Of a DNA stretch of 64,000 nt, positions 173-49,263 are shown one piece after another. The notes under the pieces were generated by a model. It saw only the letters and a program-made list of their open reading frames with translations. It did no database searches and was not told the DNA's origin. Numbering within the stretch: position 1 is the stretch's first letter; each line of letters opens with the position of its first letter. A program made the position numbers and the translations under genes. The DNA comes from Octopus sinensis (taxonomy: Eukaryota): the NCBI RefSeq assembly GCF_006345805.1, contig NC_043009.1:23312001-23376000 (forward strand), given 5' to 3'.

Positions 173-265
173 ATGGACATAGATTCAGATATCAGTGTAA
201 AACGCACTTATCGTCGTTATGAGGTGTACAGGGGTCAGTCTCCAACCAGTCAAAGCAGGACTGAG
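173..265 (+). CDS. Prm: Paramyosin exon 1 (MDIDSDISVKRTYRRYEVYRGQSPTSQSRTE)
   Basis: ATG in strong context aaaccATGG, 31 codons, perfect donor GAG|gtaagt at 266 (phase 0). VYRGxSP..Q.R.E resembles the paramyosin head motif and joins in frame to LRIRELED. Too short for the ORF track. Confidence 0.9.
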
Positions 266-3792: not shown

Positions 3793-3796
3793 TATA

Positions 3797-13772: not shown

Positions 13773-13828
<56 letters not shown>

Positions 13829-15192: not shown

Positions 15193-15277
<85 letters not shown>

Positions 15278-16637: not shown

Positions 16638-16686
<49 letters not shown>

Positions 16687-17079: not shown

Positions 17080-17139
<60 letters not shown>

Positions 17140-17952
17140 CATACATACAAAAAAATTAGCAATGACTGAGCAAAGAACTCAGCATATATGTGTATACGTG
17201 TACATATGTGTTTCCGTGTGTGTGTGTTCATGTGTGTGTTTGAGTGTGTTCTTGACAATATGCATTTGTATTTACAAGTAATAACTGTGGGTGCTTCCTT
17301 CTCCGCTTTATTCTTATGTATATATGTTTGCGTGGCGTGTAAGTATATTCGCATGTAAAGTATGGGTGCCTCGCTTATCCGGTACACTTGAGGTGACCCC
17401 CCACCTCGTCATTAAAATTAGATCCTCATTGTAGTCAAAATAAATAAAAAATATATCAAAACCTGCTAAATAAAGCTAAAAACAATTGTCTAATTATTTG
17501 TATAACGAGTATCTTAAACTAAGAGGCAAGCTCCCGAGGGCAGTTTCGAATCTTGTTGGGGCTTTCACATTATTCACTATCTTAATATCCTTGGAAAGAA
17601 CATGAAAGTGTCAAAATTTCCAAACGTTATTTCCCTTAAAATATTAAAAGAAAGCTTAAGAAATTGGCTTTAAATAAACCAGTACCTTAAACTAAAGATG
17701 CTTATTCCGCTATTCCATCCCTCTCCCCCTCCCTTTCCCCTCCTCTCTGTTTTTGAAGTAACTGGGTGAACACTGCACTTATATCAACATTTTGTCCGTC
17801 TTTACGTTCTGAGTTCAAATTTCGTTGAGGTCATCTTTGACCTTCATCCCTATGGGGGTCGGTGAAATAAGTACCAGCTGAGCACTGTGGTTGAGATAAT
17901 CGTCTAATCCCCGCCTGCAAAATTTCGAACTTCGGGCTCTATAATAGGCAAG

Positions 17953-18015
<63 letters not shown>

Positions 18016-19117
18016 GTGGTGTTGTTGTATGGTACTTTTTTTTTACTTTAGTATGTGCTGGATAGTGCAATTGGTGCTGCTGTTAGTGATAATTTAACTC
18101 AGAGACAAAACCGGCTGCCGTTTTTGCATGTGACAGAAATTTGGGAGAAAATGTTATATTATGGTTGTGGGTCTTAACGAACGCTGCTCTCCGCTTCTCA
18201 TTCATCCATTTTTCATTATTTCATTATTCTTTCATCCATTCTATAAACCAATATATATTATTCATAAAATTACCCATTATTGTTGGTCAGCCTAAGATTA
18301 TAAGATGTATGTACTCTTAAATCTGTACAAATCGCTTTGTTTCAAATGAAAGCATAAGGTGCAATCAAATACTAATTTAAACAAGATAGTACAAAATATA
18401 AATATCATCAAACAAATAAAAAAATTCGCGAAATGGAACCCAATTAAAAACAAAACAAAAAAACTTTAACGACCCTCATCAACAACCAAATTAAAAATAT
18501 TAAAACATAAACAACACAAAAATAAAACAAAGATACGTTATAAGACCGTCCCAAATCAAATAAACAGACAAAAAAATTAAAAATTAAGAATAAATATAAA
18601 AGATACACACTAAAATATCTAATTTTTATTATATTGAAATCCAAAATGCAAACGGCAGCGTTTTTTGGCTTCAATGTGAAAAATTCCGCGGAAAAGCCAA
18701 CTTCACGAATGGAATAATTAAGGTTTGTTTTGAGATTAAAATTTAAAAATAAAATAAAACCATCCCCCCAAAAAAGAAAACCTATCTCTTTTCTTATAGA
18801 TTGTAAAGACACGACATATTGGATTTGATCAAAGTGAAATAGACAGAGCAGAAGCACGGTTTCGGGTATGTTGTAAGTGGTGTGCTAGGTTCAAACTCTA
18901 TCTCCGAAATAACCAAACCATAGTTGTACCTGGATTATCTTCTTCCCTCTCTGAATACAGTCTACTGTGATCCTTAACCCCTTTTATTTCTCAACCCTTC
19001 TGCTGTGCTGTTGTGGTTTACCCTCGACACGATTATTTATTATTTTTAATTTTTTTTTTTAGTTATTGATTGATTTATATTTTTATTTGGAATGCAATCT
19101 AATACCTCAAATAGGGA

Positions 19118-23423: not shown

Positions 23424-23480
23424 TTAAGAATCAGGGAGCTGGAAGATGCTTTAGACTCCGAGAGGGACAGCAGGATCAGA
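23424..23480 (+). CDS. Prm: Paramyosin exon 2 (LRIRELEDALDSERDSRIR)
   Basis: tttcttcatccag| acceptor, 57 nt, |gtaagt donor, phase 0/0. Confidence 0.93.
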
Positions 23481-23867
23481 GTAAGTAAAATATATATTTA
23501 TCTTTCACGTTTCCCAACACTATAATGTACCCAGGGATTGCAGTCCGTTATTGATAACTCCCACTCGTCAATCTAATTAGATTAAAAATACTTTCCTCCA
23601 CCTTGGTGGAAAATAATTCGAGGACTGACGATGTCGTTACTCTGGCAGTAAGCATAACGTACGAGAGCAGTGACCATCGCTGTATAATCTATCCAAATTG
23701 ATCCATTGAGGGAGTATCTAGGAGGTCGGTAAGCCTAATACAAATAACAATAAAATCTTTCAAGTTATACTTTACCGTCATAAGCAGGGGATATTTATTT
23801 GGCTGCATTTGTATATTTTGCTGTCCATTCGCGCCCTAGTTAACACTCTAATTATATTTAACAAGCA

Positions 23868-24243
23868 TGGAGGGGCAATAGCCCAGTGGTTAGGGCAGCG
23901 GAATCGCGGTCGTAGGATCGCTATTTCGATTTCCAGACCAGGCGTTGTGAGTGTTTATTGAGCGAAAACACTTAAAGCCCCACGGCAGGGGGTGGTGGAG
24001 AACCCTGCTGTACTCTTTCACCACAACTTTCTCTCACTCTTTCTTCCTGTTTCTGTTGTATCCGTATTTCAAAGGGGGCAGCCTCGTCACACTCTGTGTC
24101 ACGCTGAATCTCCCTGAGAACTACGTTAAGGGTACACGTGTCTGTGGAGTGCTCAGCCACTTGTATGTTAATTTCATGAGAAGGTTGTTCAATTGATCGG
24201 ATCCATTGGAACCCTCGTCGTCGCAACCGACGGAGTGCCACGA
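23868..24243 (+). mobile_element. Full-length tRNA-derived SINE (family B) with a 12-bp TSD
   Basis: A-box TAGCCCAGTGG and B-box-like ATTTCGATTTCC. ATTTAACAAGCA is duplicated at 23856-23867 and 24244-24255. A second copy lies at 29166. Confidence 0.88.
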
Positions 24244-24857
24244 ATTTAACAAGCACTAAACGGCTGGTCGACTAGCTACAAACTATAGTCAAATCTCGTT
24301 CGAACGATATTCTCCTACAGCATAGAGATTCACATCAGGGAAGTCCAAGGTACACTATGCTCGAAGAAAACAACAAAAATCGTGATTGTTACGGTTGGAA
24401 TTATTTTCATTATAGGTCTGATTCGATAATGTAGTCCTAGATATACTACACCTGGAAAACACAGACGTGATGGTAAGGATTGAATTGTCCTTCATCAAAC
24501 GCATGCTCTGTCACAATGGACAACATGCTAAATATCTCTAAACCAAGAGAGAGTTATAAACTCGTGTGCCGCTGGATTGAGGTTATAACCTTGAAGACTG
24601 TGCCGTCTTATTTGAAATTTATTTATGTCTTATTTAATATTAATGTTTCCTTACATTAACACAAATTTATGTATTTATTGGGGTGGAGTGTCATTCTTTT
24701 GACCAAGGGTAGATGGAAAGCAATGTTTACGCCTGTGGGTTTAGGAACCAGACGGTAAAGGAACGTTATTAAATGCTTCCGGGCATTTTGCTGGTCCTTC
24801 CGATTCATTATAAATAATTAATTTATGATTATATATATAAATGTATAACGATGATAT

Positions 24858-24916
<59 letters not shown>

Positions 24917-24940
24917 TTTCTTTTTTTTCTCCCCCTCCAG

Positions 24941-25027
24941 TTCGAGAAACTCGCAGCAGAACATGCTATTCTTATTGATTCATTGAACGAACGTCTCGAA
25001 GATGTTGGTTTAACTTCCATCTCACAG
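24941..25027 (+). CDS. Prm: Paramyosin exon 3 (FEKLAAEHAILIDSLNERLEDVGLTSISQ)
   Basis: ttttctccccctccag| acceptor, 87 nt, CAG|gttagt donor. Confidence 0.93.
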
Positions 25028-26124
25028 GTTAGTATTTAACGTGTTATTGAAACAATGTGCGTGACTGTGTCTTTTGTATGAATGCTGTATAAGTGTGTGC
25101 CTGCACATACTTGTTATAGAAAAGAGACCACACAATCTTAATTAAGAACCTTATTGTACTACCGCTATTTGTGTATATATCGTATATCAACAATTCGGTC
25201 CATCTAGCTTGTTAACTGGCTAGTTGGGTTGACGATCCAAATTCACGTGGGGAATGATGGGCCTCGTCTAGTCAACTCATTCAAACCAGTTATAAATTGA
25301 GCATATGCATAGGGACAGTTGAACACAAAGTAATGAATATATAATATTGAGACAGTATGAATAACAACCACCCTCTACAAAAGAAAAAAAAGTGTATTGG
25401 AGTCCTTCCATGATGTCTGCACCATAACAGAATCACACCAACGCCATGTTTCAATTATTTTTACTAATTTCACTGCCTGATGAGATATCGTCTTGCGTAT
25501 TCGGTGGCTGAGTACACCAACGCTTTCAAATCTTAATTGTCTACCCTTAATTTCACCGTGACATCAAAGGCGAGCCCAATATATCTGACCCAAATTTTAC
25601 CTTTTAAACATGAACCAACGAGGAAGACCACTCTATGGTCACACAACCTACAAAAAAAATCATAAATATAGACGCATACATATCTGAATGAATAATAAGC
25701 TCGCTTTGTAGCCATGCGGTTTAAGGTCCTTTCCTACGATGCGGCACCTGGGACAGATGTCTTCTTCTCTAGGTCTAGGCACCTTGTGAATGATTTTGGT
25801 AGACGGGAAACTGTGCAGAAGACCGTGTGTGTGTGGGGGGTGTATTTTCCTCACTGCTTGACAACCGGTGTTGATTTATTTACATCGCTGTAACTTAGCG
25901 GTTCGGTAACAGAAACAGATAGAATAAGCACCAATCTTAAAAACAAAAATAAATATTGGGGACAATTTGTTCAACTAAAATTCTTCGAGGCGGTGCTCCC
26001 AGAATGGCTGCTTTCAATGACTAAAACAAGTGAAAGATAATAAGCATTGTTTTTGAAAGCAAAATGGCGGAAGGTTAATGGGAGGGGGGCTGGAATAGCT
26101 TTGTTGTGAGTTTTAAATTTAGAA

Positions 26125-26400
26125 GGCGCATGGCCCAGTGGTTTGAGCGTTGGACTCATGATCATAAGGTCATAGTTTCGATTCCCAGAACGGGCGTTGT
26201 AGTCTTGAGTAAAAACACTTCATCTTACGTTGCCCCAGTCCAGTCAGCCGTAAATGAGTTCCAACAATAGCTAGAAAGTTAACTCAGGGTGAGTGGGTTG
26301 TAATTTCAGTCCTTTATATACCATGCAAACCGAGTTAAGCTCCGGCCTTTCGAGTCTTAAGGCTCATAACAGATTTGTATGAGTCGAATAAATGAGGGAT
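26125..26400 (+). mobile_element. tRNA-derived SINE upstream of exon 4
   Basis: GGCGCATGGCCCAGTGG A-box, GTTTCGATTCC B-box, and the shared central block. Confidence 0.75.
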
Positions 26401-26461
26401 AAATAACAAGAAAATAAGCCCTTAAAAGACGTTCCTAATGTATGTTATATTTGTTTTCCAG

Positions 26462-26628
26462 AGTGAACTCGCTCGCAAGAAGGACAGTGAGGTGATCAAA
26501 CTCCGAAAAGACCTTGACCTTGCTATTACTCAACATGAGAGCACTGAACAAAGTCTTAGGAAGCGCCATCAAGAGACAATCAACGATCTGTCTGAACAGA
26601 ATGATTACCTCACAAAACAGAAAAACAG
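26462..26628 (+). CDS. Prm: Paramyosin exon 4 (SELARKKDSEVIKLRKDL...YLTKQKN-R)
   Basis: tttgttttccag| acceptor, 167 nt, AG|gttcgt donor in phase 2. Confidence 0.93.
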
Positions 26629-26789
26629 GTTCGTAACATTTAAAATAATTCACACATGCACACATACATACGTGCATACTTACATTGATACAGATGCACA
26701 TATATACATACAAACACACATGCGCCTCAGAGGAGCGGGCGTGAGGTCTTCTCATGCTCTTTATAACTGATTCAAATAATATAAAGATT

Positions 26790-27106
26790 CACTTCGGTCA
26801 TGAATGACCATGAGATTCCACCTAGAAAGTTACCCTCTGAGGCACAAGTTCGGGCAAGGTTGTTTATGGAAAACCAGCAGTCGCCCATGCATACCAGCCT
26901 TTCCTTTCCATGCCACTGATGTTATCCAAGGGAAAGGCAAAATCCCATACAGTTTGGCACCAGTGATGTCGCACCTCTTTTCTACAGCTGAGTGAACTGG
27001 CGCAACATGAAGTAAAGTGTCTTGCTCAAGACACAGCCCGATTCAGGAATCGAACTCACTACCGCCTGATTGTGAGCCTGATCCTCTAACCACTGAGCCA
27101 TGCGCC
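26790..27106 (-). mobile_element. tRNA-derived SINE downstream of exon 4
   Basis: Reverse complement begins GGCGCATGGCTCAGTGG...GAGTTCGATTCC; the head is homologous to 26125-26258. Confidence 0.78.
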
Positions 27107-27283
27107 TTGCCTTCACAGTTCTCTATATAGACTAATGGTTCCGGTTGCATGGAGCCTTCGGCAAGTGCCTTCTACTATAGCATCGAGCCGGCCAATATCT
27201 TGTGAGTGGATTTGGTAGTCGGGAAGTGAAAGAAACCTGTCGAACACACACACTCACAAACACACACACACACACGCGCACAC

Positions 27284-27339
<56 letters not shown>

Positions 27340-28678
27340 ATGTATGTAAATACGATGTGAGTGTAAACTTTATAGTTTGCTTTCAAAGCTCGGCTACATA
27401 TGCCGGCCAGCAAATGTTATACAATGAGAATGATCATATTACTGGATATATATATCTGTAATTCCGTAATATCTATAAACTTCATGCAAAGTTATGAATA
27501 GCAGAAAATGGATTGAGCAACAATTTTATTGCGTAAGTCTACAATTGTTTCCACGTCGTTTATATATATATGATTGTGTGTATGTACTTATTTATTTACG
27601 TACACATATGTCTGTCTATAGCCATATATGGATTTATATCTTACCGTCTAAATGTTTCTAATGCTGGTAATTAATGGCAGAACAAGGGAAGCAATGAATG
27701 TAAAGGTAAATATGGAAAGAAATAGGAAAATAGAAATAAAAATAGATTAAAATATGTAGAACAGTATAGAATAAAAATAAGTAAAAATAAAACAGTAAAA
27801 ATTTGAAATATGGCTAAAAATATTAAATAAAAATAAGATAAAAATAGAACTAACTAAAACAGAAGTTAAAAAGCAAAATAAAAATATATAACTAAAAAGT
27901 AGATATAATAAATAAAATGAGGAATAATTATTTAATGAAAAATCAGGTGAAAAATTACAAACAAATCGTTGTTAAATACATACTTAAACATATATATTTT
28001 AACATTTATGGTTTTATATATTCCTGTATTTTTCTTTATAGTCATTAGTTTCCCTTGTCTTTCGTTTACCTCAAACTGAAATAATTAGATGGAAAGATTT
28101 AGATCTAGAAAGATATATAGATAGACGGACATGGGCATGAATATGTGTGTATGTGTGTGTGTGCGTGGTTGTGTGAGAGAGAGAGAGAGTGTGTGTGTGT
28201 GTGTACACGCATATATAAATACAAGCAAATATATACAAATACATACATTGCATATACACATACATATTTACGGACACATATATACGTATAAACATATATG
28301 CACGTACATTGTGTATGTGTGTGTGTGTGTGTGTGCGTGTGTATGTATGTGTAGGCTAAGAAGGTCAAAACTCCGAAGTCACAATCAACATATGTGTGTG
28401 TGTATGTATGTATGTATGTATGTATGTATGTATAGGTATATGTATACACATATATGAATAGAACTGATAAGAGAAGTGAAGTTAGAGAACTGATATCTAT
28501 TCCATTCGTTTACAGCTGTTCCATAAACTTGTCATATGTATAATAGACATTTGCACTTATATAAGATATATGTGTGTGAACGCCCATACATACATACATA
28601 TATGAGGGAGAGAGAGAAATGTCGATGTTTGATTATCGCAAATAAAAATAAATATTATATCTTTCATTTCTTCAACAG

Positions 28679-28757
28679 AATCGATAAAGAAAAGTCACAA
28701 CTTCTCATTGAAATTGATGGATTGCAGACCACTTTAGATTCAGTTTCGAAGGCCAGG
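28679..28757 (+). CDS. Prm: Paramyosin exon 5 (IDKEKSQLLIEIDGLQTTLDSVSKAR)
   Basis: tttcttcaacag| acceptor, 79 nt (phase 2 to 0), AGG|gtaagg donor. Confidence 0.93.
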
Positions 28758-29017
28758 GTAAGGATATGCCTTTTTTCATCCATAAATACCGACCGTTTCT
28801 CCACTGCAGACTAATATTTTTCACAAATACACTGGTATACATATCGTCTGAATAACATACCTATAAAACACATCCACACAGACACTTTGTGCGCTCATAC
28901 AAACGTTAACATTAACATGAATATATTTTCATACACCTCTCTCTCTCTCTTACTCCCCCCTCTCTCTGGCAATGTACAAATTCGCATACATACATATATA
29001 CATACAAACATAATACA

Positions 29018-29163
<146 letters not shown>

Positions 29164-29165
29164 TG

Positions 29166-29530
29166 TGGAGGCGCAATGGCTCAGTGGTTAGGGCAGTGGA
29201 CTCGCGGTCATAGGATCGCGGTTTCGATTCCCAGACCGGGCGTTGTGAGTGTTTATTGAGCGAAAAACACCTAAAGCTTCCACGAGGCTCCGGCAGGGGG
29301 GGGGTGATCCCTGCTGTACTCTTTCACCACAACTTTCTCTCACTCTTACTTCCTGTTTCTGTTGTACCTGTATTTCAAAGGGCCGGCCTGTCACTCTCTG
29401 TGTCACGCTGAATATCCCCGAAATTAAGGGTACACGTGTCTAAGGGTAGCCCACGTTTTACGTAGCTGTGTTGATTCGGCAGCCCTTACCCGTTCGATCT
29501 TACACGAGCAGTGTTCCGTTATTATAGGTC
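29166..29530 (+). mobile_element. tRNA-derived SINE (family B), second copy, with a garbled 3' part
   Basis: TGGCTCAGTGG A-box and GTTTCGATTCC B-box. Highly similar to 23868-24140 up to about 29440, then only loosely similar. Confidence 0.85.
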
Positions 29531-29596
29531 AATTCTATATATATACATATATATTACGTATATTATATACCGTATAGTGCATATATATATATATAT

Positions 29597-29652
<56 letters not shown>

Positions 29653-29823
29653 CACACACGATTGTCATTCTGAATCTGTATATACACTTGTAAAGCACTA
29701 CATAAATACACATATATTATATATATATACATACACATACACAAACATGTGTATATATATACATATATATACACTTATTCATTTGTTGCACATTCTAAGC
29801 TATTTCATAATCATTCTTGTACT

Positions 29824-29862
<39 letters not shown>

Positions 29863-29864
29863 AG

Positions 29865-30110
29865 GCTGCTGCAGAAAGCAAATTGGATGGTTTAGACGGC
29901 CAAGTTGGAAGACTGAGGATCACCGTTGATGACTTAACTAAGCAACTCAATGATGCCAACCATGCCAAGGCACGTCTCACCCAGGAGAATTTCGACTACC
30001 AGCACCAGGTCCAGGAGCTGGACAGTGCCAATGCTGCATTGGCTAAGGCTAAAATGCAGTTGCAAGCTCAGGTCGATGACTTGAAACGTTCATTGGACGA
30101 TGAATCCAGA
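29865..30110 (+). CDS. Prm: Paramyosin exon 6 ([17 protein letters not shown]...[12 protein letters not shown])
   Basis: 246 nt phase 0/0, AGA|gtaagt donor; unusual acceptor (TTA)n-aaag|. Confidence 0.92.
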
Positions 30111-30184
30111 GTAAGTATCCTCTACATTTTTTCTATATCCTATGCCATACTATGATATGATATAATCATACACACACAAGCAAT

Positions 30185-30944
30185 TATTTAATAAAATCGC
30201 CATTGGCTTCAACTACGTCCTCCAGACGACTTCGGAATCTCCTGCAACTCTTCTGGACTGTCACCTTTTTTAAGTTGGTAAATGTCATACTCTTTGCCTT
30301 CAGTTCCTCTTTGGTGTTACAAGGAGTTTTGTTGGTCTCTCGCTCAACTCCGCCCCACACATAATAATCAAAGGGTTGCAGTCTGGGGAGTTAGGTGGCC
30401 AGATGTTACGGGTGATGTGGTCGCAGAAATTGTCTGGCATCCATAATTGGGTTCTCCTGCTTGTGTGACATAGTGCAGAGTCCTTTTGCCAGACATAGGG
30501 TCTTCCAGCGGCCAACCTCTTAACCCAGGGCAGCACTACCTCCTCCATGTACTTGATGTAGGCCTTTGTGTTGAGTCCATGTTGAATGTGGGAAGATGAA
30601 TGGAGGCATAACGTCACCATCACTAGTGATCACACCAAACATCATGATGCTGATTGGATGTTTGGCTTTTATAACTCTCGGTACATGTTTGGGGGACACG
30701 GCAAGCCAATGGTTGTTCTGTGTGTTTTCCATCTGTTCGTATTGGAGCTTCCGGCGCGAATGCCAGGCAGTACAGCATGTCGTTTCCAAATTTCTGGCCG
30801 AGTGAGTTACGTCATGGTGCTGTTTTTCTCACAGACGGTGTCCAACTGACCCTACTATACTGTGTAGGCGACAAAATCAAAAACAAACAATGTACATGCG
30901 CGAAAAAAAAATTTAAATGGCGACAATTTCCCCATCGTACCCTG
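30185..30944 (-). mobile_element. Internally deleted Tc1/mariner element of the DD37D (maT-like) type, in paramyosin intron 6
   Basis: Frameshifted minus-strand peptides MFGVITSDGDVMPPFIFPH, YVWQKDSALCH and WPPNSPDCNPL-DYYVWG give 37 residues between the 2nd and 3rd Asp once a 1-bp deletion is corrected. One CAGGGT-type end at 30944; the other end and the N-terminus are missing. Confidence 0.8.
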
Positions 30945-31098
30945 TTCAAATACATATATACATGCATACATGCATTCATACATACATACATACATACACA
31001 CACACACATATAAACATATGATACATATATATGGTTCATACACACACACACACTCACACACAATATATATATATGCATATATATATAATATATATATA

Positions 31099-31143
<45 letters not shown>

Positions 31144-31535
31144 ATATATATTATATGTGTGCATACATACATATATATATCATATATATTTGTGTATCCA
31201 TGTTATTAGTATTATGTATCACAACCAGATAACTGTGATACTTGATTGGTTAATTAAAGCTAATTTTATTTAAAAGTTGTGTTTGCCCATATCCTCAAGA
31301 ACATTATACAACATACGTATATACATACATATTATATATATATATACACACATATATATAGATATATGTATACATATACATACATATACATTCACATATA
31401 TACATATACGTACATATATACATAAATATATGTACACACACATACACACACACACATATATATATCTGAGCGCCTATTAATAATAATACTGTAATTGTTC
31501 CATTGTTGTTGTTTTTTTGTTTTCCCGTTTGGATT

Positions 31536-31593
<58 letters not shown>

Positions 31594-31664
31594 CATGCAT
31601 TTATATATCTATGTATTCTTATATTATTATTGTATCACTATATTGAATTCTTCTTCTTACACAG

Positions 31665-31861
31665 CAACGTAGCAACTTGAGCGCCCAGCTTGCTGCTCTG
31701 CAGTTAGACTTCGACAACTTGAACGCCCGTTACGAAGAAGAGTCTGAAAGTAACACCGTTCTTCGTAACCAACTGAGCAAAATAAATGCCGAATATAGCG
31801 CCCTTAAGACCCGATTCGACAAGGAAATATTGGCCAAGACTGAAGAATTGGAAGATCTCAA
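31665..31861 (+). CDS. Prm: Paramyosin exon 7 (QRSNLSAQLAALQLDFDNL...KTEELEDL-K)
   Basis: ttcttcttacacag| acceptor, 197 nt, AA|gtaagt donor in phase 2. Confidence 0.94.
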
Positions 31862-31901
31862 GTAAGTTAATTCAACCAGTTTGGCCAAACTGCTGCATCT
31901 A

Positions 31902-31972
<71 letters not shown>

Positions 31973-31976
31973 ATCT

Positions 31977-32045
<69 letters not shown>

Positions 32046-32047
32046 AT

Positions 32048-32081
<34 letters not shown>

Positions 32082-32226
32082 GAGAGAAAGGAAGAGAGAA
32101 ATAAGGAAAGCACTACCCCACTGTCAAACTATAAATAGAAATCAGAAAATAACAAATCAAGAAAATAATTTGCGAATGAATGAGTTTATCATAATTTAAC
32201 GAGCGTCCCTTTTCTTTAATCTTCAG

Positions 32227-32359
32227 ACGAAGAATGAACCTCAAAGTCAGTGAATTGGAAGATTTACTTGAACAATCCCGCGTTCGTATCAACAACTTGG
32301 AAAAGACTAAGATTAAACTCACCACAGAAATCAAGGAACTCACCATTGAAATTGAGAAT
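32227..32359 (+). CDS. Prm: Paramyosin exon 8 (RRMNLKVSELEDLLEQ...ELTIEIEN)
   Basis: tttaatcttcag| acceptor, 133 nt, AAT|gtaagt donor. Confidence 0.94.
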
Positions 32360-32790
32360 GTAAGTGAATTCGAAGTTTTTTATCTGCTACCTCCCAATCC
32401 TCCATTACCACAATATAACGGGTGAAGGGGAATGAAATCACATGATCGCTAGAAATGGCAGCTAAATATCCTTCTCAAATAACAAATTGAAAACGTTAGT
32501 GAATTAGATGCATTTTCATCAGCTACCTCATGATCCTCGTATTACCACGATCTCACTAAGATGAGAAATCACATGATCGTTCGCCTGGCTAGAAATAGCA
32601 GCTAAACATGATCACTCGAACGGCTAGAAATAGCAGCTAGGTATCCTTCTCAAAGTATAAAATTGAGAATGGAAGTGAATTAAAAGTATTTGATCTGCTA
32701 CTTCACAATGATCATGATCAAGATTTAACGAGAGCAAGAAGTCACATGACAGGTTAGAAATAGCAGCTAAATATTACTCTCAAATCAGAT
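32349..32790 (+). repeat. Three imperfect tandem units (about 135, 176 and 127 bp) starting at the exon 8 donor
   Basis: aaattgagaatgtaagtgaatt (32349), aaattgaaaacgttagtgaatt (32484) and aaattgagaatggaagtgaatt (32660), each followed by ...cacatga..g(c/t)tagaaat(g/a)gcagctaaa. Confidence 0.85.
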
Positions 32791-33527
32791 CACCCCCTTC
32801 CACTGCATTACAAGAAAGGAAGATTATAATTGGTTAATGCAGCCTTAGGTATAATAAATCTGAACAAAAGAAAGTATGAGATGATCGTGTCTAGAATGTT
32901 TCGGATCACAGGTATACTGTATTAGGCTTAAACAAAAACAACAACAGCAACAACAATAACAACAACAACGATATCATAACAAAAATTATAACTGTGACCA
33001 TAGTATGGTCATCACTCGCCATTACTGTTCTGAACCAAGTAGGGATCTTGTATATAATATATTTTCTCGACATGTTAGAATTAGCAATGAAATCTCTGTT
33101 ATACCACCCACCCTACAAAGGAGGGCAACAACCGGATAGAAAGTGAGGGTGATGCATGTCAGCCACTGAAGTATTCTCTATAGGCCTGAGGTGTTTTCAA
33201 AAGAAATTTTCAAACTTAATATATTGATATTTGTTGGTCAGTGAGCAATCGAGGGCTTTCGGGCAAATAAAAAAAAAATAAGCCCTATAAAAAGTGAACC
33301 ATTACAAGATGAAGTTGCTGATCCTTGCTGTAACATCTTAAAAAAATAGAGGAAGGACATACCAAAACTCCTTTGATTTAAGCGCCTATATGCACAGTTG
33401 ATTTCTTATAGTTTCTTTCCTCTTTAGATCTGTTGAATATATTTTCTCCTCAAACCTTCCGGTTTTCTTTAGCACAATCGCAACGGCTGACATTTATCCT
33501 ATACATTTGGTGCCTTTCGTTTCACAG

Positions 33528-33744
33528 ATCCAGATCATTGTTCAGGAACTCACCAAGAAGAACCGTCAACTCGAAAACGAAAATGCTTCATTGGGCAAAC
33601 GTGTTGAAGAATTGCAAGCTGAGAACGCCAACTTGTTGTCTGCTAACCGAAACTTGGAACAGGAGAATCATCGTCTCAAGGTTTCTAACGCTGAACTCGG
33701 AGAGAGAGTTGATAACCTCACCAGGGAGAACAAACAGCTTACTG
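33528..33744 (+). CDS. Prm: Paramyosin exon 9 (IQIIVQELTKKNRQLENEN...LTRENKQLT)
   Basis: tttcgtttcacag| acceptor, 217 nt, G|gtaagt donor in phase 1. Confidence 0.94.
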
Positions 33745-34133: not shown

Positions 34134-34366
34134 GACGCTCTTTTGTACAGATGTGATAACAATGGAGACTTCTTGCAGTAGGTGTTACAATATTGTTTTG
34201 GTAAATTTCGTTATCACGTTTCAGTCCGCTTTCTGGGGCACAACATTTTTTTCACATTTCCTGCAAAAGAAGATGCCATAAAATGCATAGTTATCAACTT
34301 CCCTGTGCTCTTCTGATGACTTCTAAGTTCTTCCTTAGATAAACACAGCCACAGTCCTTACGTGTT

Positions 34367-34418
<52 letters not shown>

Positions 34419-34514: not shown

Positions 34515-34741
34515 ACAACCTCCGTGAAACCGTCAACGCATTGAAAGATGCTAACCGCCAGCTTGCCGAACTCCAGGCTCTCCGCGCTCAATTGGAAGCC
34601 GAACGTGATTCCCTTACCATTGCTCTCCGTGACACCGAAGAAAGCTTGCGTGATGCCGAAAACAAACTGCAAGCCGCCACCACCGCTCTCAACCAACTCC
34701 GTAGCGAGAGACTGACTGACAGACCCTCAGTGAGAAATTGA
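34515..34741 (+). CDS. Prm: Paramyosin exon 10, 3' end disrupted (DNLRETVNALKDANRQL...ALNQLRSE, then aberrant sequence and TGA)
   Basis: ccatttccag| acceptor in phase 1 and a clean coiled coil to 34708. Then RLTDRPSVRN*K*D*IESI in the same frame, with no phase-2 GT donor after ATC (34765). Confidence 0.85.
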
Positions 34742-34846
34742 AAATAAGATTGAATTGAAAGCATCTCTACTCGCTCATCTGTCTCGTCTCTTCATCATCA
34801 TCATAATTATTCATTTACACATACATCATCATAGTAGTTATTATGT

Positions 34847-34903
<57 letters not shown>

Positions 34904-35033
34904 TGCTCCGATCTATTTATTATACACTACATATATATTAGATTCTTGCCATATGCATTCTCACACACAAATTATATCATCATCTTCATCACCATTTTAT
35001 TATTTCACCAACTTTTTTTTTTCACTACAACAG

Positions 35034-35229
35034 GAAGAGCAGCGCTCGTGCCATTGAAGAGCTTCAACGCACTTTGGTGGAAGTCGAGACCAGATACAAG
35101 AGCGAACTCAACAGACTCAAGAAGAAATATGAAACTGACATTAGGGAACTGGAGACCGCTTTGGATGTTGCCAACAGGCAGAACGCTGAACACATCAAAG
35201 TCATCAAAACTCTGCACATCAAGATTAAG
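35034..35229 (+). CDS. Prm: Paramyosin exon 11 (KSSARAIEELQRTLVEVETRYK...TLHIKIK)
   Basis: tttttcactacaacag| acceptor requiring phase 2, 196 nt, AAG|gtcagt donor. Confidence 0.93.
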
Positions 35230-36270: not shown

Positions 36271-36399
36271 GAAATCGAAACCCGTCTTGAGGAAGAACAT
36301 CGTATCAGCGAAGACCTCCGTTCCAGCTTGTCTGTATCTGAAAGGAAACGCATCAGCCTTCAAACCGAACTTGAAGATTGCCGTTCTCTTCTTGAAACT
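36271..36399 (+). CDS. Prm: Paramyosin exon 12 (EIETRLEEEHRISED...DCRSLLET)
   Basis: tcctttgcag| acceptor, 129 nt, ACT|gtaagt donor. Confidence 0.94.
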
Positions 36400-37766
36400 G
36401 TAAGTATTTATGATTCCACATTTCGATATGGTCACTTGCGCTGACCATTTACAAATGAGCATGGTGACCATCGGTTTTAGCTTGACAGCTTAATGTCCCT
36501 ATGGTACATTATTTGCGTAAATGGATGTGGCCATATCATAGTTTGGCTTAGATATAAATGTAAATTGTGTGTGTGTGTGTGTGTGTGTGTGGAGAGTGAG
36601 AGAGTGAGAGAGAGTGAGAGAGAGAGAGAAAGAGAGAGAGAGTGGCAGTGACCATATAAATATCTGTAGAATTCACGCTGTGACAGTCCTCGCTGCCCCA
36701 CTTAGGAGAAGCGTACAAGGTTAAGGACCAAAACGCTGTGATCCTGAGATGCCTACTGACGATACGGAAAAGGGTTCCGACGTTGCCATGAATTCAGAAG
36801 TAGATCTTGCAAAACCACTGAGTAGATCTTGCAGTTTCTTCGTGGGGCAAAGTATCTTTGAAATTTATTTCACCTTACACTTGCTAATCAAAGTGTGAGA
36901 AAATGTAACCAAACCAAGTCGTGGTTTTAACGAAATATTGTAGAAGATATACAAAGTAACTGGATTGGTACATTTTTATCGATCCAGAAAAGAAAATTGG
37001 AGAGCGAAGTTGGCTTTGGCAGGATCTGCACTAAAAGCGCAGAGAGTCGGAACTAATACCACATGCATTTTATCAAACATTCGAAAGGCTCTGCCAATTT
37101 ACTTTGTTTTAAAAGTATGAATCCAGGTGATGGATTGGCGAAACTTTTAGAGAATCGGGAGAGATACTTCGCCGTAACTGTTCTGTCTAATTGTGTTCTG
37201 ACAGCAACGCTTGCTACCACTCTAGTGCTAAGCTGTCGATGGCCCTTTCCTTGGATAAACATATGTGTCTGTTGGGAGGATAAATATTTGCATACATGAG
37301 CAGCTGCTAAGTTTCCTGAAAAAAAAATGTCTTTATCAGGCCTGCAAACACATAAAATGTATGGTCAACATTGACCGACAAAGGTCATACAAATTGGCAA
37401 AGTAACCATACTGCATTTTTTGATTTCTTGTCAAGCCATCACACATCTAATACTCATGGGAACTATATGAATGACGCGATATTCCATTTTCTTCCTTGAC
37501 CTAAAATATAGGGCCTGATTTTATATATTTGTTATGATACGCGTCGTAAAGTGAGAAATAGCTTCTTGACAAATCAAATTTACAAGATGACTTTGATTCT
37601 TGTCCCCTGTTGTGGATATTTTACTTTCCTCATGTTGTTAGGTTAAGCATGAATAATGCAACTTTTGATTTTCTGTTCTTGCCCCCTTAAACAAATAAAT
37701 GCTGTTGCCGACCAGTCGAAAAATAAAACGCTAATATGTATATATATTTTTTATTCTTCCAAACAG

Positions 37767-38138
37767 GCTGAACGTTCTCGCAAGAATGCTGAAAATGAAT
37801 TGCACGAAACCACTTCACGCTTATCCGAATGCCAACTTCTCATCACTTCCCTTACAAACGACAAGAGACGCTTGGAAGGTGACATCCACGGTATGCAAGC
37901 CGAATTGGATGAGGCTATCAATAACATGCGTGCTGCCAACGATCGTGCTGACAGGCTAGCCGTCGAAGTTAACCGTCTTGCTGATGAACTCAAACAGGAA
38001 CAAGAGAACTACAAGAATGCTGAAAGCCTTCGCAAGGCTCTTGAAATTGAAGTTAGAGAAATCACTATTAGACTGGAAGAGGCTGAGGCTTTCGCCCAGA
38101 GGGAAGGAAAGAGAATGGTTGCCAAATTGCAAGCACGT
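37767..38138 (+). CDS. Prm: Paramyosin exon 13 ([12 protein letters not shown]...[12 protein letters not shown])
   Basis: ttcttccaaacag| acceptor, 372 nt, CGT|gtaagt donor; contains [14 protein letters not shown]. Confidence 0.95.
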
Positions 38139-38429
38139 GTAAGTAAATGCAATTTCTGCAGCACATTATCGTCGCAATTTTGTATTTTTTATTTCCGTTC
38201 GCAAACACTTTTTCTCATTTTATCTTTTTCATTTGTTTTTATTTATTCATTCATTTCGCTCTTTCACTCTTCGTTCTTCTTCCTTTATATTTATTTCTCT
38301 TTTTCTCTCTTCTACTCAATTTCTTTCTTTCTTACACTCTTTCTTGCTTCTTTTCTTTTTTTTGATTAGTTCTTGCAGTTAGTTATTCCGCCATCAGCTT
38401 TCTTTTTCTTTATTCTGTCTGTCTGTCAG

Positions 38430-38494
38430 TCTATCTATGTATCTATCTATCTAACTATCTATCTACCTATCTATCTATCCATCTATCTATCTAC

Positions 38495-38555
<61 letters not shown>

Positions 38556-38630
38556 CATCTATCTACCTATGTATCTATCCATCTATCTATCTATCTTTCT
38601 ATCTATCCATCTATCTATCTACCTATCTAC

Positions 38631-38685
<55 letters not shown>

Positions 38686-38754
38686 CCTATCTATCTATCC
38701 ATCTATCTATCTATCTATCTTTCTATCTATCCATCTATCTATCTACCTATCTAC

Positions 38755-38821
<67 letters not shown>
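38430..38821 (+). repeat. About 390-bp (ATCT)n tetranucleotide microsatellite with variant units
   Basis: Direct reading of the sequence. Confidence 0.97.
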
Positions 38822-38824
<3 letters not shown>

Positions 38825-39020
38825 CTTTTTATTGGCCTCGTATTTTTTGCATTACTTTCTTTTTATCTCCTTTCTGCTCTCTTTCGATTTTCTCTCTCTC
38901 TCACTCCTTTCTTATTCCTTTCTCTCTCCTTCATTCTTTATCGTTCCCAATTATTCATTGGATTATTGAACTACTGATTGATTGATCAGTCATTAATCAA
39001 TTGATTATTTCAACTTTTAG

Positions 39021-39221
39021 GTCAGAGACTTAGAAGGTGAACTGGAAGTGGAACAGCGCCGATCAAGGGAAGCCATTGCTTCTTATCGCAAGGTTGAGCG
39101 CCAGTTCAAGGAATTGACCACAGCTATTGAAGATGACCGAAGAGTTATTGCTGAATTGACCAGTGCCAACGACCAGCTCTTACTTAAAGTCAAAGCCTAC
39201 AAACGCCAATTGGAAGAGGCT
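39021..39221 (+). CDS. Prm: Paramyosin exon 14 (VRDLEGELEVEQRR...KAYKRQLEEA)
   Basis: caacttttag| acceptor, 201 nt, GCT|gtgagt donor. Confidence 0.95.
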
Positions 39222-39457
39222 GTGAGTTCAACGTCATCACCGTTATCTTCGTCGTCGTCGTCGTCGTCGTCGCCATCGTCGTCGTGCTCATTGTTGTCAT
39301 CATCCTCATGTCCATCATCATTATCATCATCATTCTGTTCATCATCATCATCACCACTACCATCACCATTTCATCGAGTTTTAACACATGGCACTGAAAA
39401 AACTGTATGTGTGTGTACTTAGAAAAGTGTCAATTGATCAGATATATTTGTGTGTGA

Positions 39458-39548
<91 letters not shown>

Positions 39549-39574
39549 TCTGTGTGTGTCCTCATGCTAAAAGA

Positions 39575-40115
39575 ACGTATTAGTAATTGATGTTAATCCA
39601 GTATAGTTTTGATGATAATCCTATATGGAACTGATATTAGTCTAATATAGCTTCGATAATAATCTTTTATGTTAATCTAATATAGTTTTGATGATAATCC
39701 AATATGGATGCAATGAGAATCCTATATAGAATTTATGTCACTCTAATAATGATGATAATACAATATAATTCTATACAGGTTTAATAATAACCCAATAAAG
39801 AAGTGATGTTAACCTAATGTTACTCTTTAGAGCGGCGAGCTGGCAGTGTCGTTGGCATGCCGGACAGAATGCTTAGTGGCATTTCGTCCGTCTTTACGTT
39901 TTGAATTCAAATTCCGCCGAGGTCGACTTTGCCTTTCATCCTCTCGGGGTCGATAAAATAAGTACCAGTTAAGCACTGGGGTCGATGTAATCGGCTTACA
40001 CCCTCCTCCGAACTTCCTGGCCTTGTGCCACAATTTGAAACCAGTCTAATATAACTTTGATGATAATCCAAAAGAGGTCTGGCGATAATCCTATACAGGT
40101 TTGATAATAATACCA
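39575..40115 (+). repeat. Degenerate about 20-bp minisatellite split by a SINE A insertion
   Basis: Units like gatgataatcctatatagttt at 39575-39820 and again at 40045-40115, on both sides of the SINE. Confidence 0.65.
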
Positions 40116-40623
40116 TACAGGTTTGTTTTCCTATTTTGATTTTGTTTTGACACTCCATGGCTGATTATAAAAAGCTGACTTCTCTCACATGTAATTCTTT
40201 TATATTCCGGGAGAAAATTGCTTAACCTATGCACTTCAAAGGTTATAAACAGCTTTGCCTGGAGAAAGTTAATTAGCTTTATTACTTGGAATATAAAAGG
40301 GAAACCCAAAAACATAATCTTCGAGGATGCCGCAATCATTAGTGAATGGAAATCCTGAATATATTTCCTAAACGGCTTAGGTCCTATTATTATGCTAATT
40401 TCTCGCCTCTGACCAATGGGCTGTTTGTTGTTCTGTTAAGACACCGCCGTCTATATGATAATTAAAATGTGAGGCTTTCCTTAAAACTGCTACTTTGCTT
40501 TTCCTAATTGTGAGTCGTGAGTTTGAGCAAATAGAATTTTTTTTAATTTAGAGAGTAAGCAACCATAATAACTTAATAAAACATCGTTACTTGTCTGCAT
40601 TTCGAAATGTTTGACTTTTTCAG

Positions 40624-40785
40624 GAGGATGTTACCACAATCACCTTGAACAAATACCGCAAGGCTCAGCAATTAGTGGATGACGCTGAACACAGAGCAGA
40701 TTTGGCTGAGAAGAATCTTTCTGCGGTACGAAGATCTCGTTCGATGTCCGTTTCAAGGGAGATAACCAGAGTCGTGAGGATATAA
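40624..40785 (+). CDS. Prm: Paramyosin exon 15, coding part (EDVTTITLNKYRKAQ...SRSMSVSREITRVVRI*)
   Basis: gactttttcag| acceptor, 53 aa then TAA at 40783-40785. Confidence 0.95.
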   Translation, partial: EDVTTITLNKYRKAQQLVDDAEHRADLAEKNLSAVRRSRSMSVSREITRVVRI

Positions 40786-46870: not shown

Positions 46871-49263
46871 CTTTTAAAATATATCTAAAAAAGACACGAT
46901 TCTGTTCGTTTAAATGACATGTTTTTTGTGTCATTGCGATATAATTGTTTTTGTTAAAAGTGAATGCAAAACCGATTTCAAGAAAATGGTACACGAGTTC
47001 AAAAGTCTCTACAGCTATATAATAATCATTTTTTTTCTCTCTAATTGAAGAAAAAAAGAAAAAATTCTTCAGCAGCGATTCTTCTTTTACATACATACAT
47101 TTATCTATTTATTTAATTGTCTAATTAAAGCCTGTTGCTGGATTTCAACGGTACCTGAGATCAATGACTCTTTTGGACTCATTTCAAAATTAAGGTATTT
47201 TTTTAAACAAAGGGAAAAAAGGAGGAAAAAGTCCAGAAAGAAAATTATATTTTTCTTTTTCGTGATTTTTCTTCGATTTTTTTTTATTTGTAAAGAAAAA
47301 ATATAAGAATACGTCATTGTAATTTATTATTATTATTTTTATTATTATTGTTAGCTGTATATTGATAATGTTACTGTTTGTCTTCTGTTTGCGACTGAGG
47401 TCTGGATCCTACGTAGACAAATGACAAATGGTATAACGTCATGTATAACTGCGCTCTATGAAAATAATAAAAAAAATCTGCACTATTTCCATTCTGTGAT
47501 CGATTTACTCAATCATTACATACATATATATATATATGTACTGTTACATATGTACTGTTACTCATATTCTTCGAAAAATTCTTTCTCCTTAGAGGTATCT
47601 GTTATAGAACCTTCAGGCATGATCAGGGGAGACAGCTGTGTATAGCTTAAAGAAGAGGAGAAAAAATAGCAACCGAAAACATGATAAACCATAGAAGAAA
47701 AGGATAAATCGATAGAAAGTATTTTCAAAAAGGACATCAAAATAAACAACAAAAATACAAAAACAAAAACACCACTGATGAAGAACTTAAAATCTTGCTC
47801 TCCCTCCCCACTTCCCTCGGGAACTGTTCAGTTGCATTCATTGACTTCCAAACTCTGTATAAATAACTGTTTTTTTTTTTACGTTATCATTATTTTAAAT
47901 TTTAAAAAAGAAAATTAATTTCATTTATTATTAATATTTTTGTAAATTTTAGTTGTAATTTTTTCCCTCTCTTTTTCATTTATCTATATTTTTCTTCTTG
48001 CATCTTTTATTTTAACGACTTTGTTTTTGTATCTAATCTTGAAGACTGGTTAAAAAAGGTCACACACACACACACACACAACATACAACTCATATATATA
48101 TACACTCATACGATACACAGACATTGTATCGAAATAAAGCAGGAATAAATCTCTAGCTCATTTATAAACTAGAGCTATCCCACCTATTCTCTCAAAAACG
48201 AACACTTAGAACTTAGGTAACAAATATACATATTATTCTACCCCTATGATCGGGTTATATTCTTTCAACTTGATAGCTTATCGACAGGGAACAGATCACA
48301 TTGCTTGCCACTGGTCTCGACTGAGTTATATAAAAACGAAGTAGAATTTGCCTCGTGTAAATTAAAAAATTTGATATTCCATATTAATCCGTTACAAAAA
48401 AAAATTACATATTTCATCTAACAATGATAATGATTGTGCATAAAAAGAAACGAAGTAACTCTGCTAAGCAAAATGGGTGTTATTGCTGGAGAAATTGTGT
48501 TGGAGGCTTAAAAATAATTTTCATACATACCATAACACTTATGGTCGTTTTTTATCTGATGTGATCAGAGTTTCTCTGATATTTTGATAATTATAAAATT
48601 AACAAAACAAAAAAAAAATGTATTGCATCGAAAAATATATTTTAAAAAGGCAATGGTAATTAATACAGGAATTCATTCTTTTTAATGATTTTTTTTTCAC
48701 GAGACAATATTGAAAACGGTAATCTGTATTATCGAACAGATTAAGCTAACGACGAAAGACAGATCAAAACAAAACAAAGATAATCCATGGGATTTTCAGG
48801 GATTTGTTAGCGTATGACTTTCCCGCTCTTTAGAGTATTCCAACTACAGGGGAACCGGATAGATGCAAGCTTGCGGCCATATTGCTATCATCTCTCTTTG
48901 TGTTTTCTATGACTCAGTCTTATCTGTTTACCTGACCATCACGTATATCACCACGATTTTGATTCTCGGAATAGACGGTGTTATTATTATTGTTGTTGTC
49001 AATAATGATAATAATAATAAGACAAACTTACATGCTCCTTTCCGTAAAGGCTTGTCTTTTTAGTCGTTGCGAATTAACAGAAGGGAGTAATTTTTGTGGG
49101 TTTACTAAAGAAAGATATCAACTACTGAACAAGTGAGGTTTTATTTTAAATATATGACCCTCTTAGAAACACCAACGGTCGGCCTTAGATTTGAAGACAC
49201 TGAGAATTTCTAATCTGGTGATTTTGGCCGGTTCTTTTGGCAAGAACCGAATCATGAAGATTG

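What the first reader, a model, noticed from the sequence alone, without database searches (positions are those of the whole stretch)
34709..34790. Paramyosin exon 10 is locally scrambled: premature stops and no usable donor in an otherwise intact gene
Seen: after ...LNQLRSE the frame reads RLTDRPSVRN*K*D*IESI. IESI (34754-34765) is in the same frame but is not followed by the phase-2 AG|GT that exon 11 (G AAG AGC...) requires. As written, the protein stops at 500 aa. From my recollection of the family consensus, this stretch should read roughly MEQRLREKDEEIESIR, and the observed DNA looks like an insertion-riddled version of it (about 12 nt too long). Inference: most likely an unpolished long-read consensus patch, because the other 14 exons are flawless. 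The alternatives are a recent null allele or a pseudogenised paralogue. An in-frame rescue exists on paper: donor TCA|gtgaga at 34730 joined to the AAG at 35035-35037. It would shorten the coiled coil and must outcompete the upstream CAG.
Basis: partly seen in the sequence, partly recalled or inferred. Interest (0 to 1): 0.72.

Follow-up and report, generated by a model that had tools for sequence, protein, structure and literature searches.

The report
Garbled exon end in octopus paramyosin
The last ~57 bases of one exon of an otherwise perfect octopus paramyosin (muscle protein) gene are garbled; the public annotation already flags this spot as low quality, and it is most likely a genome-assembly error rather than biology.

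Summary
After ...LNQLRSE (ending at 34708) the frame reads RLTDRPSVRN*K*D*IESI. The stops are at 34739, 34745 and 34751, and no phase-2 GT donor is available for the next exon (35034).

The gene is a 16-coding-exon paramyosin (173-40785, + strand). The other 15 exons are open and have compatible phases. All but the first begin after AG, and all but the last, which ends at the stop codon, are followed by GT.

Orthologues and the Pfam myosin-tail profile both require 15 residues here, MENRLREKDEEIESI, followed by AG|GT. The window has 57 nt in place of 45, and these resemble the expected sequence only weakly.

The lesion is already in public data. [quoted passage not shown] All 31 positioned peptides of that entry fit the window.

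A de novo Octopus vulgaris transcript reads ...RSEMENRL REKDEEI... across the site. It is exactly 4 codons shorter than the genomic model.

The source is probably the O. sinensis RefSeq assembly, which was built from PacBio and Hi-C data.

Verdict: most likely a local assembly or consensus error (about 0.85). A real null allele in the sequenced animal (about 0.09) cannot be excluded without reads. Interest is low.

The parts
173..265 (+). Paramyosin coding exon 1 (MDIDSDISVKRTYRRYEVYRGQSPTSQSRTE), donor GAG|GTAAGT
   Evidence: It matches public peptide RGQSPTSQSRTEI at residues 20-32 of A0A6P7T042.
18800..18865 (+). Candidate coding exon 2 (IVKTRHIGFDQSEIDRAEARFR), 66 nt, AG/GT, phase 0-0
   Evidence: It is the only non-low-complexity AG|ATH...66 nt...|GT open stretch between exons 1 and 3. 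It fills residues 32-53 of the 884-aa public model. The position is inferred.
23424..33744 (+). Coding exons 3-10: 23424-23480, 24941-25027, 26462-26628, 28679-28757, 29865-30110, 31665-31861, 32227-32359, 33528-33744
   Evidence: All have AG/GT and compatible phases. Exons 5-10 are colinear with orthologue L001 with no gaps inside any exon; L001 does not reach exons 3-4. Positioned public peptides match.
34515..34708 (+).
   Evidence: about 80% nt identity to L001, in frame; dN 0.12 with dS saturated.
34709..34765 (+). Scrambled patch: 57 nt where 45 nt encoding MENRLREKDEEIESI are expected. It reads RLTDRPSVRN*K*D*IESI.
   Evidence: The public model shows TDRPSVRNXKXDXI at residues 515-528.
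34739..34753 (+). Three in-frame stops: TGA 34739-41, TAA 34745-47, TGA 34751-53
   Evidence: They are written as X in A0A6P7T042.
34753..34765 (+). Recognisable remnant of the true exon end, AATTGAAAGCATC, containing the in-frame IESI codons (34754-34765). The AG|GT donor that should follow is absent (TCTACT instead).
   Evidence: 12/13 match to the L001 exon end, reached by 0.4% of random window segments. Also.
34730..34735 (+). Cryptic phase-0 donor CA|GTGAGA. Joined to the normal acceptor it gives a frameshift and a 526-aa product. Joined to AG 35036-37 it gives an in-frame 870-aa product reading ...RLTDRPS|SSARA...
34763..35028 (+). AT...AC pseudo-intron implied by the public model (IES|NRK: AGC|at...ac|AAC AGG AAG). 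It is an annotation work-around, not a U12 intron.
   Evidence: Inferred from peptide ESNRKSSA at 529-536 together with the sequence. The reconstruction reproduces all 31 positioned peptides.
34844..34901 (+). (TG)29.5 microsatellite in the short intron after the patch
35034..35229 (+). Coding exon 12, (R)KSSARAIEELQ...HIKIK. The acceptor is acag|G and the exon starts in phase 2.
36271..40785 (+). Coding exons 13-16: 36271-36399, 37767-38138, 39021-39221, 40624-40785 (including the TAA stop)
   Evidence: Public peptides match up to VRRSRSMSVSREI at 866-878.

Best explanation
The window carries the paramyosin gene of an Octopus vulgaris/sinensis-group octopus, corresponding to public gene LOC115218392. 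The gene itself is normal. The 3' end of coding exon 11, which should read ATG GAR AAY ... ATH GAR AGC ATC AG|GT and encode MENRLREKDEEIESI(R), is misrepresented in the assembly.

The misrepresentation is a roughly 57-nt stretch of stuttered, indel-rich sequence. It is most likely a stretch of raw-read quality or a misaligned consensus in a PacBio-based assembly that short-read polishing could not repair. It creates three false stops and removes the donor.

What is shown: the lesion is in the sequence. It is the only defect in 16 coding exons. The public model carries the same lesion and is flagged low quality. The sister species' mRNA is intact and has the expected length.

What is inferred: that the cause is assembly rather than a mutation, and that the window comes from the O. 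sinensis RefSeq assembly.
For: 1. The defect is unique. Fifteen of 16 coding exons are open, with compatible phases and canonical splice dinucleotides at every internal junction. The 11 that L001 covers align to it with no gaps inside any exon.
2. Independent estimates agree on what is missing. Orthologues L001 and L002 read MENRLREKDEEIESIR. The Pfam Myosin_tail_1 alignment of the two halves leaves exactly 15 profile positions unfilled. With those 15 residues the protein is 880 aa, the length listed for squid paramyosin.
3. Constraint is strong around the patch: dN about 0.10 with dS saturated against L001.
4. [quoted passage not shown] All 31 positioned peptides fit a model built from the window.
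5. O. vulgaris transcript Cluster-58773.164376 has a 615-aa ORF that is open through the site. It gives RSEMENRL at 244-251 and REKDEEI at 252-258. The spacing from GERVDNL to EEEHRI is 167 residues, against 171 in the genomic model.
6. The transcript has DVSNRQNA where the window and the public model both have DVANRQNA. So the window matches the RefSeq model rather than O. vulgaris.
7. That assembly (ASM634580v1) is described as built with PacBio and Hi-C. It has 20,491 contigs and 5.2% duplicated BUSCOs.
8. The form of the patch points away from a simple mutation. Two recognisable fragments are locally multiplied: GACTGACTGACAGAC, and AATTGAAA twice 17 nt apart. At least 21 edits in 49 nt sit next to 194 nt of flawless exon. 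Neutral decay or a single simple mutation would not give that.
Against: - No reads, and no cDNA from the sequenced individual or species, could be examined.
- The window's own ORFs are absent from the searchable collections.
- The intact transcript comes from a sister species that diverged about 2.5 My ago.
- The patch differs from the expected sequence by about 40%. That is much more than typical consensus error, and its resemblance to the true exon end is only marginally above chance (3.5-8% of controls do as well). A real deletion with filler DNA would look similar.
- That the window comes from the PacBio O. sinensis assembly is inferred, not stated anywhere in the data.
Confidence: 0.85

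Rival explanations
1. A real, recent loss-of-function allele in the sequenced animal. A complex deletion with insertion, or a slippage event, destroyed the end of exon 11 and its donor. The allele is carried heterozygously and was picked up by the haploid assembly. Transcripts would use the cryptic donor at 34730, shift frame and be degraded.
For: The sequence as given is unambiguous and contains no Ns. The patch is too divergent for ordinary consensus noise and resembles the expected exon end only weakly. A good cryptic donor, CA|GTGAGA, exists. The rest of the gene is intact, as expected for a very young lesion.
Against: The prior is low for a multi-event lesion confined to 57 nt of a highly expressed, strongly constrained structural muscle gene. 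The sister-species mRNA is intact. The annotation pipeline flagged the model as low quality instead of annotating a pseudogene. The probable source assembly is PacBio-based. No nearby template for the novel sequence was found on either strand.
Confidence: 0.09
2. The window holds a pseudogenised paralogue of paramyosin, and the functional copy lies elsewhere in the genome.
For: The ORF is interrupted. The public protein set for this octopus lists other entries named paramyosin, isoforms X1 and X2 of 523 and 516 aa.
Against: There is a single lesion in 16 coding exons, and every internal splice site is canonical. There is no excess amino-acid divergence: in exon 12, by my hand count, 15 differences from the mollusc consensus against 12 for L001. 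dN/dS is far below 1. The window contains no second copy. The X1 and X2 entries yield dipeptides CF, EF and VF that this protein cannot give, so they are a different, shorter locus and not an intact twin. The O. vulgaris transcript matches this gene on every listed peptide but one residue.
Confidence: 0.03
3. The sequence is real, fixed and functional. The mRNA is rescued by unusual processing, either the AT-AC splice used in the public model or the 34729/35038 splice, possibly with A-to-I editing of the stops. The result would be a paramyosin with a divergent linker.
For: An in-frame product exists on paper: 870 aa via 34729/35038. Cephalopods edit mRNA extensively (general knowledge).
Against: The O. 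vulgaris mRNA has the canonical MENRLREKDEEI sequence and length. The AT-AC pair lacks the U12 donor consensus: it reads ATCTCTAC, not ATATCCTT. The rescue product puts RLTDRPS, with a proline, into the coiled coil and removes 10 residues. Editing would have to recode three stops, one of them TAA, which needs two edits.
Confidence: 0.02

Closest known systems
Molluscan paramyosin (for example Dosidicus gigas A0A1Y1DCG9, 880 aa; Mytilus O96064, 864 aa)
   Same: Both halves match Pfam Myosin_tail_1 (profile 271-713 and 746-1078). The exon structure is colinear with the orthologue in L001. The length becomes 880 aa once the 15 missing residues are restored.
   Different: As written, the reading frame breaks after residue 512. 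The 15 residues MENRLREKDEEIESI and the exon's donor are replaced by 57 nt carrying three stops.
UniProt A0A6P7T042 / LOC115218392, 'LOW QUALITY PROTEIN: paramyosin-like' (Octopus, taxid 6645)
   Same: Every one of the 31 positioned peptides available is identical, including TDRPSVRNXKXDXI (515-528) and ESNRKSSA (529-536). The total length is 884 aa. This is the same gene with the same lesion.
   Different: Nothing detectable. The public model bridges the stops with X and uses an AT...AC join, which turns the expected I into N. The join is my inference.
Octopus vulgaris de novo transcript Cluster-58773.164376 (PMC10138644, Table S4)
   Same: The peptides on both sides of the site are identical, and the ORF reaches the same C-terminus, VRRSRSMSVSREI.
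   Different: It is open across the site and reads RSEMENRL REKDEEI. It is four codons shorter than the genomic model and has S for A in DV(S/A)NRQNA.
Residual error patches in PacBio CLR or ONT assemblies that short-read polishing cannot fix
   Same: The patch is local, indel-rich and stuttered, inside otherwise accurate sequence. It causes false stops and a lost splice site. The assembly behind the gene model is probably PacBio-based.
   Different: The cause was not demonstrated here because no reads were available. The roughly 40% divergence is high even for such patches.

Membership tests
Paramyosin (invertebrate thick-filament core protein) | Myosin-tail type coiled-coil rod (Pfam PF01576) over nearly the whole length | tested here: met
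   The upstream half scores 118.4 bits (residues 54-497 to profile 271-713). The downstream half scores 118.5 bits (residues 3-336 to profile 746-1078). The gathering cut-off is 38.1.
Paramyosin (invertebrate thick-filament core protein) | Colinear orthology with other molluscan paramyosin genes | tested here: met
   the 11 coding exons that L001 covers align to it in order, 58-89% identity per aligned segment, with no gaps inside any exon; the best database hits are mollusc paramyosin exons.
Paramyosin (invertebrate thick-filament core protein) | Length of about 850-930 aa | tested here: met
   880 aa with the 15 expected residues restored. Published lengths are 851-934 aa, with squid at 880.
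Paramyosin (invertebrate thick-filament core protein) | Uninterrupted reading frame with usable splice sites | tested here: not met
   three in-frame stops and no phase-2 donor at the end of coding exon 11. All other exons pass.
Unprocessed pseudogene | Several disabling lesions spread over the gene and relaxed constraint | tested here: not met
   There is one lesion patch only. dN is about 0.10 with dS saturated. A very recent inactivation is not excluded.
U12-type AT-AC intron (as implied by the public model's IES|NRK join) | Donor /ATATCCTT and branch site TCCTTAAC close to the acceptor | tested here: not met
   The donor reads ATCTCTAC. The last 30 nt before 35028 read ...caccaacttttttttttcactac and contain no TCCTTAAC.
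Assembly/consensus artefact | Disagreement between the assembly and the underlying reads or same-individual cDNA | not testable with these tools
   The window's ORFs are absent from the collections and the metagenome scan found nothing. Only indirect support exists: the LOW QUALITY flag, an intact sister-species transcript and a PacBio-based assembly.

The most novel reading that the evidence does not exclude
The patch is a genuine complex loss-of-function allele of the single paramyosin gene, carried by the sequenced octopus and probably heterozygous. It would be a natural knockout allele of a core thick-filament protein in a cephalopod.
Probability: 0.09. Interest if true: 0.35.

Novelty: not a real feature. 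Interest (0 to 1): 0.07.

Why it matters
There is little biological significance. The practical value is as a curation note. The public octopus paramyosin model (LOC115218392 / A0A6P7T042) carries three X residues, four extra codons and an I-to-N artefact at residues 513-531. Proteomic and in-silico peptide studies have already used that model (PMC10138644). The correct sequence there should read MENRLREKDEEIESI, giving an 880-aa protein. If the lesion were instead real, it would be a naturally occurring null allele of an essential muscle gene, which would be of moderate interest.

Tried and rejected
- **Displaced copy of the missing 16 residues.** I searched all six frames and also searched at the DNA level. 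Nothing was found. The best hit, IEEKDKSIESIFK at 47691, is at chance level.
- **Repeat or transposon insertion into the exon.** The patch is unique in the window.
- **Small inversion or templated switch from nearby sequence.** There are no inverted repeats and no nearby source sequence.
- **Same-species evidence from independent assemblies.** Exact look-ups of the aberrant ORF and of nine other window ORFs found nothing. A metagenome scan with the exon peptide also found nothing.
- **Heptad-register continuity as a functional test.** The register differs on the two sides of the site even with the normal 15 residues restored, so the test says nothing.
- **A paramyosin probe written from memory.** It was too inaccurate to map exons. 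I replaced it with composition-guided exon finding and the L001 orthologue.
- **The public 'paramyosin isoform X1/X2' entries (523/516 aa).** At first they looked like this gene truncated at the lesion. I rejected that because their digestion products CF, EF and VF cannot come from this protein, and the as-written truncation is 522 aa.

Full report
**1. The observation**

An exon begins at 34515 after ...tccag and reads (D)NLRETVNALKDANRQLAELQALRAQLEAERDSLTIALRDTEESLRDAENKLQAATTALNQLRSE up to 34708. The same frame then gives RLTDRPSVRN, TGA (34739-41), K, TAA (34745-47), D, TGA (34751-53) and IESI (34754-34765), followed by TCTACTCGC.

The next exon starts at 35034 (acag|G AAG AGC...) and needs a phase-2 donor. 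The only GTs before the first stop are at 34701 (phase 1) and 34730 (phase 0, CA|GTGAGA). The window has no Ns.

**2. The gene**

Stop-free coiled-coil stretches, splice-site inspection and comparison with an orthologue give a 16-coding-exon gene on the + strand from 173 to 40785. Every exon except the first begins after AG. Every exon except the affected one and the last, which ends at the stop codon, is followed by GT. All phases are compatible. The affected exon is coding exon 11 of 16, not 10 of 15.

Both halves of the protein match Pfam Myosin_tail_1 well above threshold: residues 54-497 to profile 271-713, and residues 3-336 of the downstream part to profile 746-1078. Extrapolating the two alignments leaves exactly 15 residues to be filled between E512 and the R of RKSSA.

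**3. What should be there**

A protein search found the orthologous exon in two other molluscs.

- P0007, on a 351-kb ENA contig (locus L001), reads ...LNQLRAEMENRLREKDEEIESIR.
- P0024 (Logan contig, L002) reads ...LNQLRTDMENRLREKDEEIESIR.

At the DNA level both read ATG GAG AAC AGR CTY CGN GAA AAG GAT GAG GAA ATY GAR AGC ATC AG|GTAA.

The window aligns to L001 at about 80% nucleotide identity up to 34708, and recognisable identity ends there. The 11 coding exons that L001 covers align to it in order with no gaps inside any exon. dN is about 0.10 with dS saturated, so long-term purifying selection is strong and L001 is a distant relative.

**4. How similar the patch is to the expected sequence**

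Only weakly.

- The best local match is AATTGAAAGCATC, 12 of 13, at the right place and in the right frame. Only 0.4% of random window segments reach that score.
- Against a codon-degenerate target for MENRLREKDEEIESI plus AGGT (49 nt), the patch needs at least 21 edits. The mean for random window segments is 26.5 with SD 2.9. Only 3.5% of random segments and 8% of shuffles do as well.
- The patch is 57 nt where 45 are expected, so +12 nt.
- It contains local stutters: GACTGACTGACAGAC, and AATTGAAA twice 17 nt apart.
- It is unique in the window, is not part of a repeat family, and has no nearby direct or inverted source.
- No displaced copy of the missing 16 residues exists anywhere in the window.

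**5. Public data**

The key evidence came from the literature. A paper listing seafood paramyosins led me to octopus UniProt entries. Table S4 of a proteogenomic study of O. vulgaris mucus (PMC10138644) contains in-silico digests with residue positions.

| Peptide | Residues |
|---|---|
| RDTEESL | 486-492 |
| TDRPSVRNXKXDXI | 515-528 |
| ESNRKSSA | 529-536 |
| VEVETRY | 547-553 |
| VRRSRSMSVSREI | 866-878 |

I built a model from the window: exons as above, read-through of 34709-34762 with stops written as X, then AAC AGG AAG from 35029. It is 884 aa long and reproduces all 31 positioned peptides.

The public annotation was therefore built on the same lesion. It bridged the three stops with X and flagged the product as low quality. 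The only standard splice pair that yields IES|NRK is an AT...AC join, 34763-35028. This is my inference. A true mRNA reading ...GAAAGCATCAG|GAAGAGC would align there with one mismatch, which would explain N in place of I. The donor ATCTCTAC is not a U12 consensus.

**6. Transcript evidence**

The same table digests a de novo O. vulgaris transcript ORF, Cluster-58773.164376 (615 aa), which runs to the C-terminus. Its peptides include:

| Peptide | Residues |
|---|---|
| RDTEESL | 220-226 |
| RSEMENRL | 244-251 |
| REKDEEI | 252-258 |
| VEVETRY | 277-283 |
| EEEHRI | 334-339 |
| VRRSRSMSVSREI | 596-608 |

The mRNA of the sister species is thus open across the site and reads LRSEMENRLREKDEEI, then three residues, then RKSSA. 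The spacing from GERVDNL to EEEHRI is 167 residues, against 171 in the genomic model, so the transcript is exactly four codons shorter.

The transcript has DVSNRQNA where the window and A0A6P7T042 both have DVANRQNA. The window therefore agrees with the RefSeq model and not with O. vulgaris.

With the 15 residues restored, the window's protein is 880 aa. That is the length listed for Dosidicus gigas paramyosin.

**7. Source assembly**

From my own knowledge, OCTVU entries with LOC1152... gene names derive from the RefSeq annotation of ASM634580v1 (GCF_006345805.1). That assembly is now assigned to O. sinensis. Papers describe it as the PacBio plus Hi-C assembly of Li et al. 2020, with 20,491 contigs and 5.2% duplicated BUSCOs. 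They also put the O. sinensis / O. vulgaris split at about 2.5 My. That the window comes from this assembly is an inference from the identical lesion.

**8. Interpretation**

The most likely reading is a local assembly or consensus artefact, about 0.85.

- The defect is single and confined to 57 nt.
- It sits next to flawless, strongly constrained sequence.
- It has a stuttered, indel-rich form that neither neutral decay nor a simple mutation would produce.
- It lies in what is probably a PacBio-based assembly.
- The annotation pipeline treated it as a sequence problem.
- The closest available cDNA is normal.

The main caveat is that no reads or cDNA from the sequenced animal could be examined. 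In addition, the patch is so divergent that a real deletion with filler DNA would look much the same. I give a real heterozygous null allele about 0.09. If the sequence were real, the likely outcome would be use of the cryptic donor at 34730 with the normal acceptor, a frameshift and a 526-aa product. The only in-frame join (34729 to 35038) gives ...RLTDRPS|SSARA..., 870 aa, with a proline in the rod.

A pseudogenised paralogue (about 0.03) is disfavoured by the single lesion and the evidence of constraint. The octopus entries named "paramyosin isoform X1/X2" (523 and 516 aa) are a different protein: their digestion products CF, EF and VF cannot come from this sequence. A fixed functional variant rescued by unusual processing (about 0.02) is contradicted by the O. 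vulgaris mRNA.

**9. Verdict**

The feature is most probably not biological, and it is already flagged in public annotation. Its value is as a curation correction: residues 513-531 of A0A6P7T042 should read MENRLREKDEEIESI. Interest is low.

Noticed in passing
window 57161-58199 (- strand): Remnant of a Mos1/mariner-type transposase, split over several reading frames. Pfam Transposase_1 scores E=4e-21 at 57331-57660 and HTH_48 scores E=1.5e-8 at 57933-58199.
   Followed up: partly
window 23901-24143 and 29199-29441 (+ strand): Two copies of an interspersed repeat about 245 nt long, 84% identical, lying in two different paramyosin introns. Similar short ORF motifs elsewhere (about 54000 and 60000) suggest more copies.
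   Followed up: partly
window 266-18799: If exon 2 is 18800-18865, the first intron of the gene is about 18.5 kb, against 0.3-2 kb for all later introns.
   Followed up: no
window 30300-30830 (- strand), inside a paramyosin intron: Two overlapping ORFs have transposase-like sequence (...RPYVWQKDSALCHTSRRTQLWMPDNF...NSPDCNPL). Pfam gave no hit at E<=1e-3.
   Followed up: partly
window 34366-34418 and 34844-34901: The affected exon is flanked by a long CA-dinucleotide run upstream (read) and a (TG)29.5 microsatellite 80 nt downstream of the patch. Such arrays could contribute to read misalignment.
   Followed up: no
public data, not the window: UniProt A0A6P7TIV8 and A0A7E6FQ28: The octopus entries named 'paramyosin isoform X1/X2' are only 523 and 516 aa and give dipeptides (CF, EF, VF) that are absent from this gene. 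They are a different, short paramyosin-named locus of unknown nature.
   Followed up: partly
window 47691-47741 (+ strand, frame 3): The peptide IEEKDKSIESIFKKDIK weakly resembles the missing LREKDEEIESIRK (8 of 13 residues). It lies 7 kb beyond the gene's end in AT-rich sequence, and I judged it to be chance.
   Followed up: no
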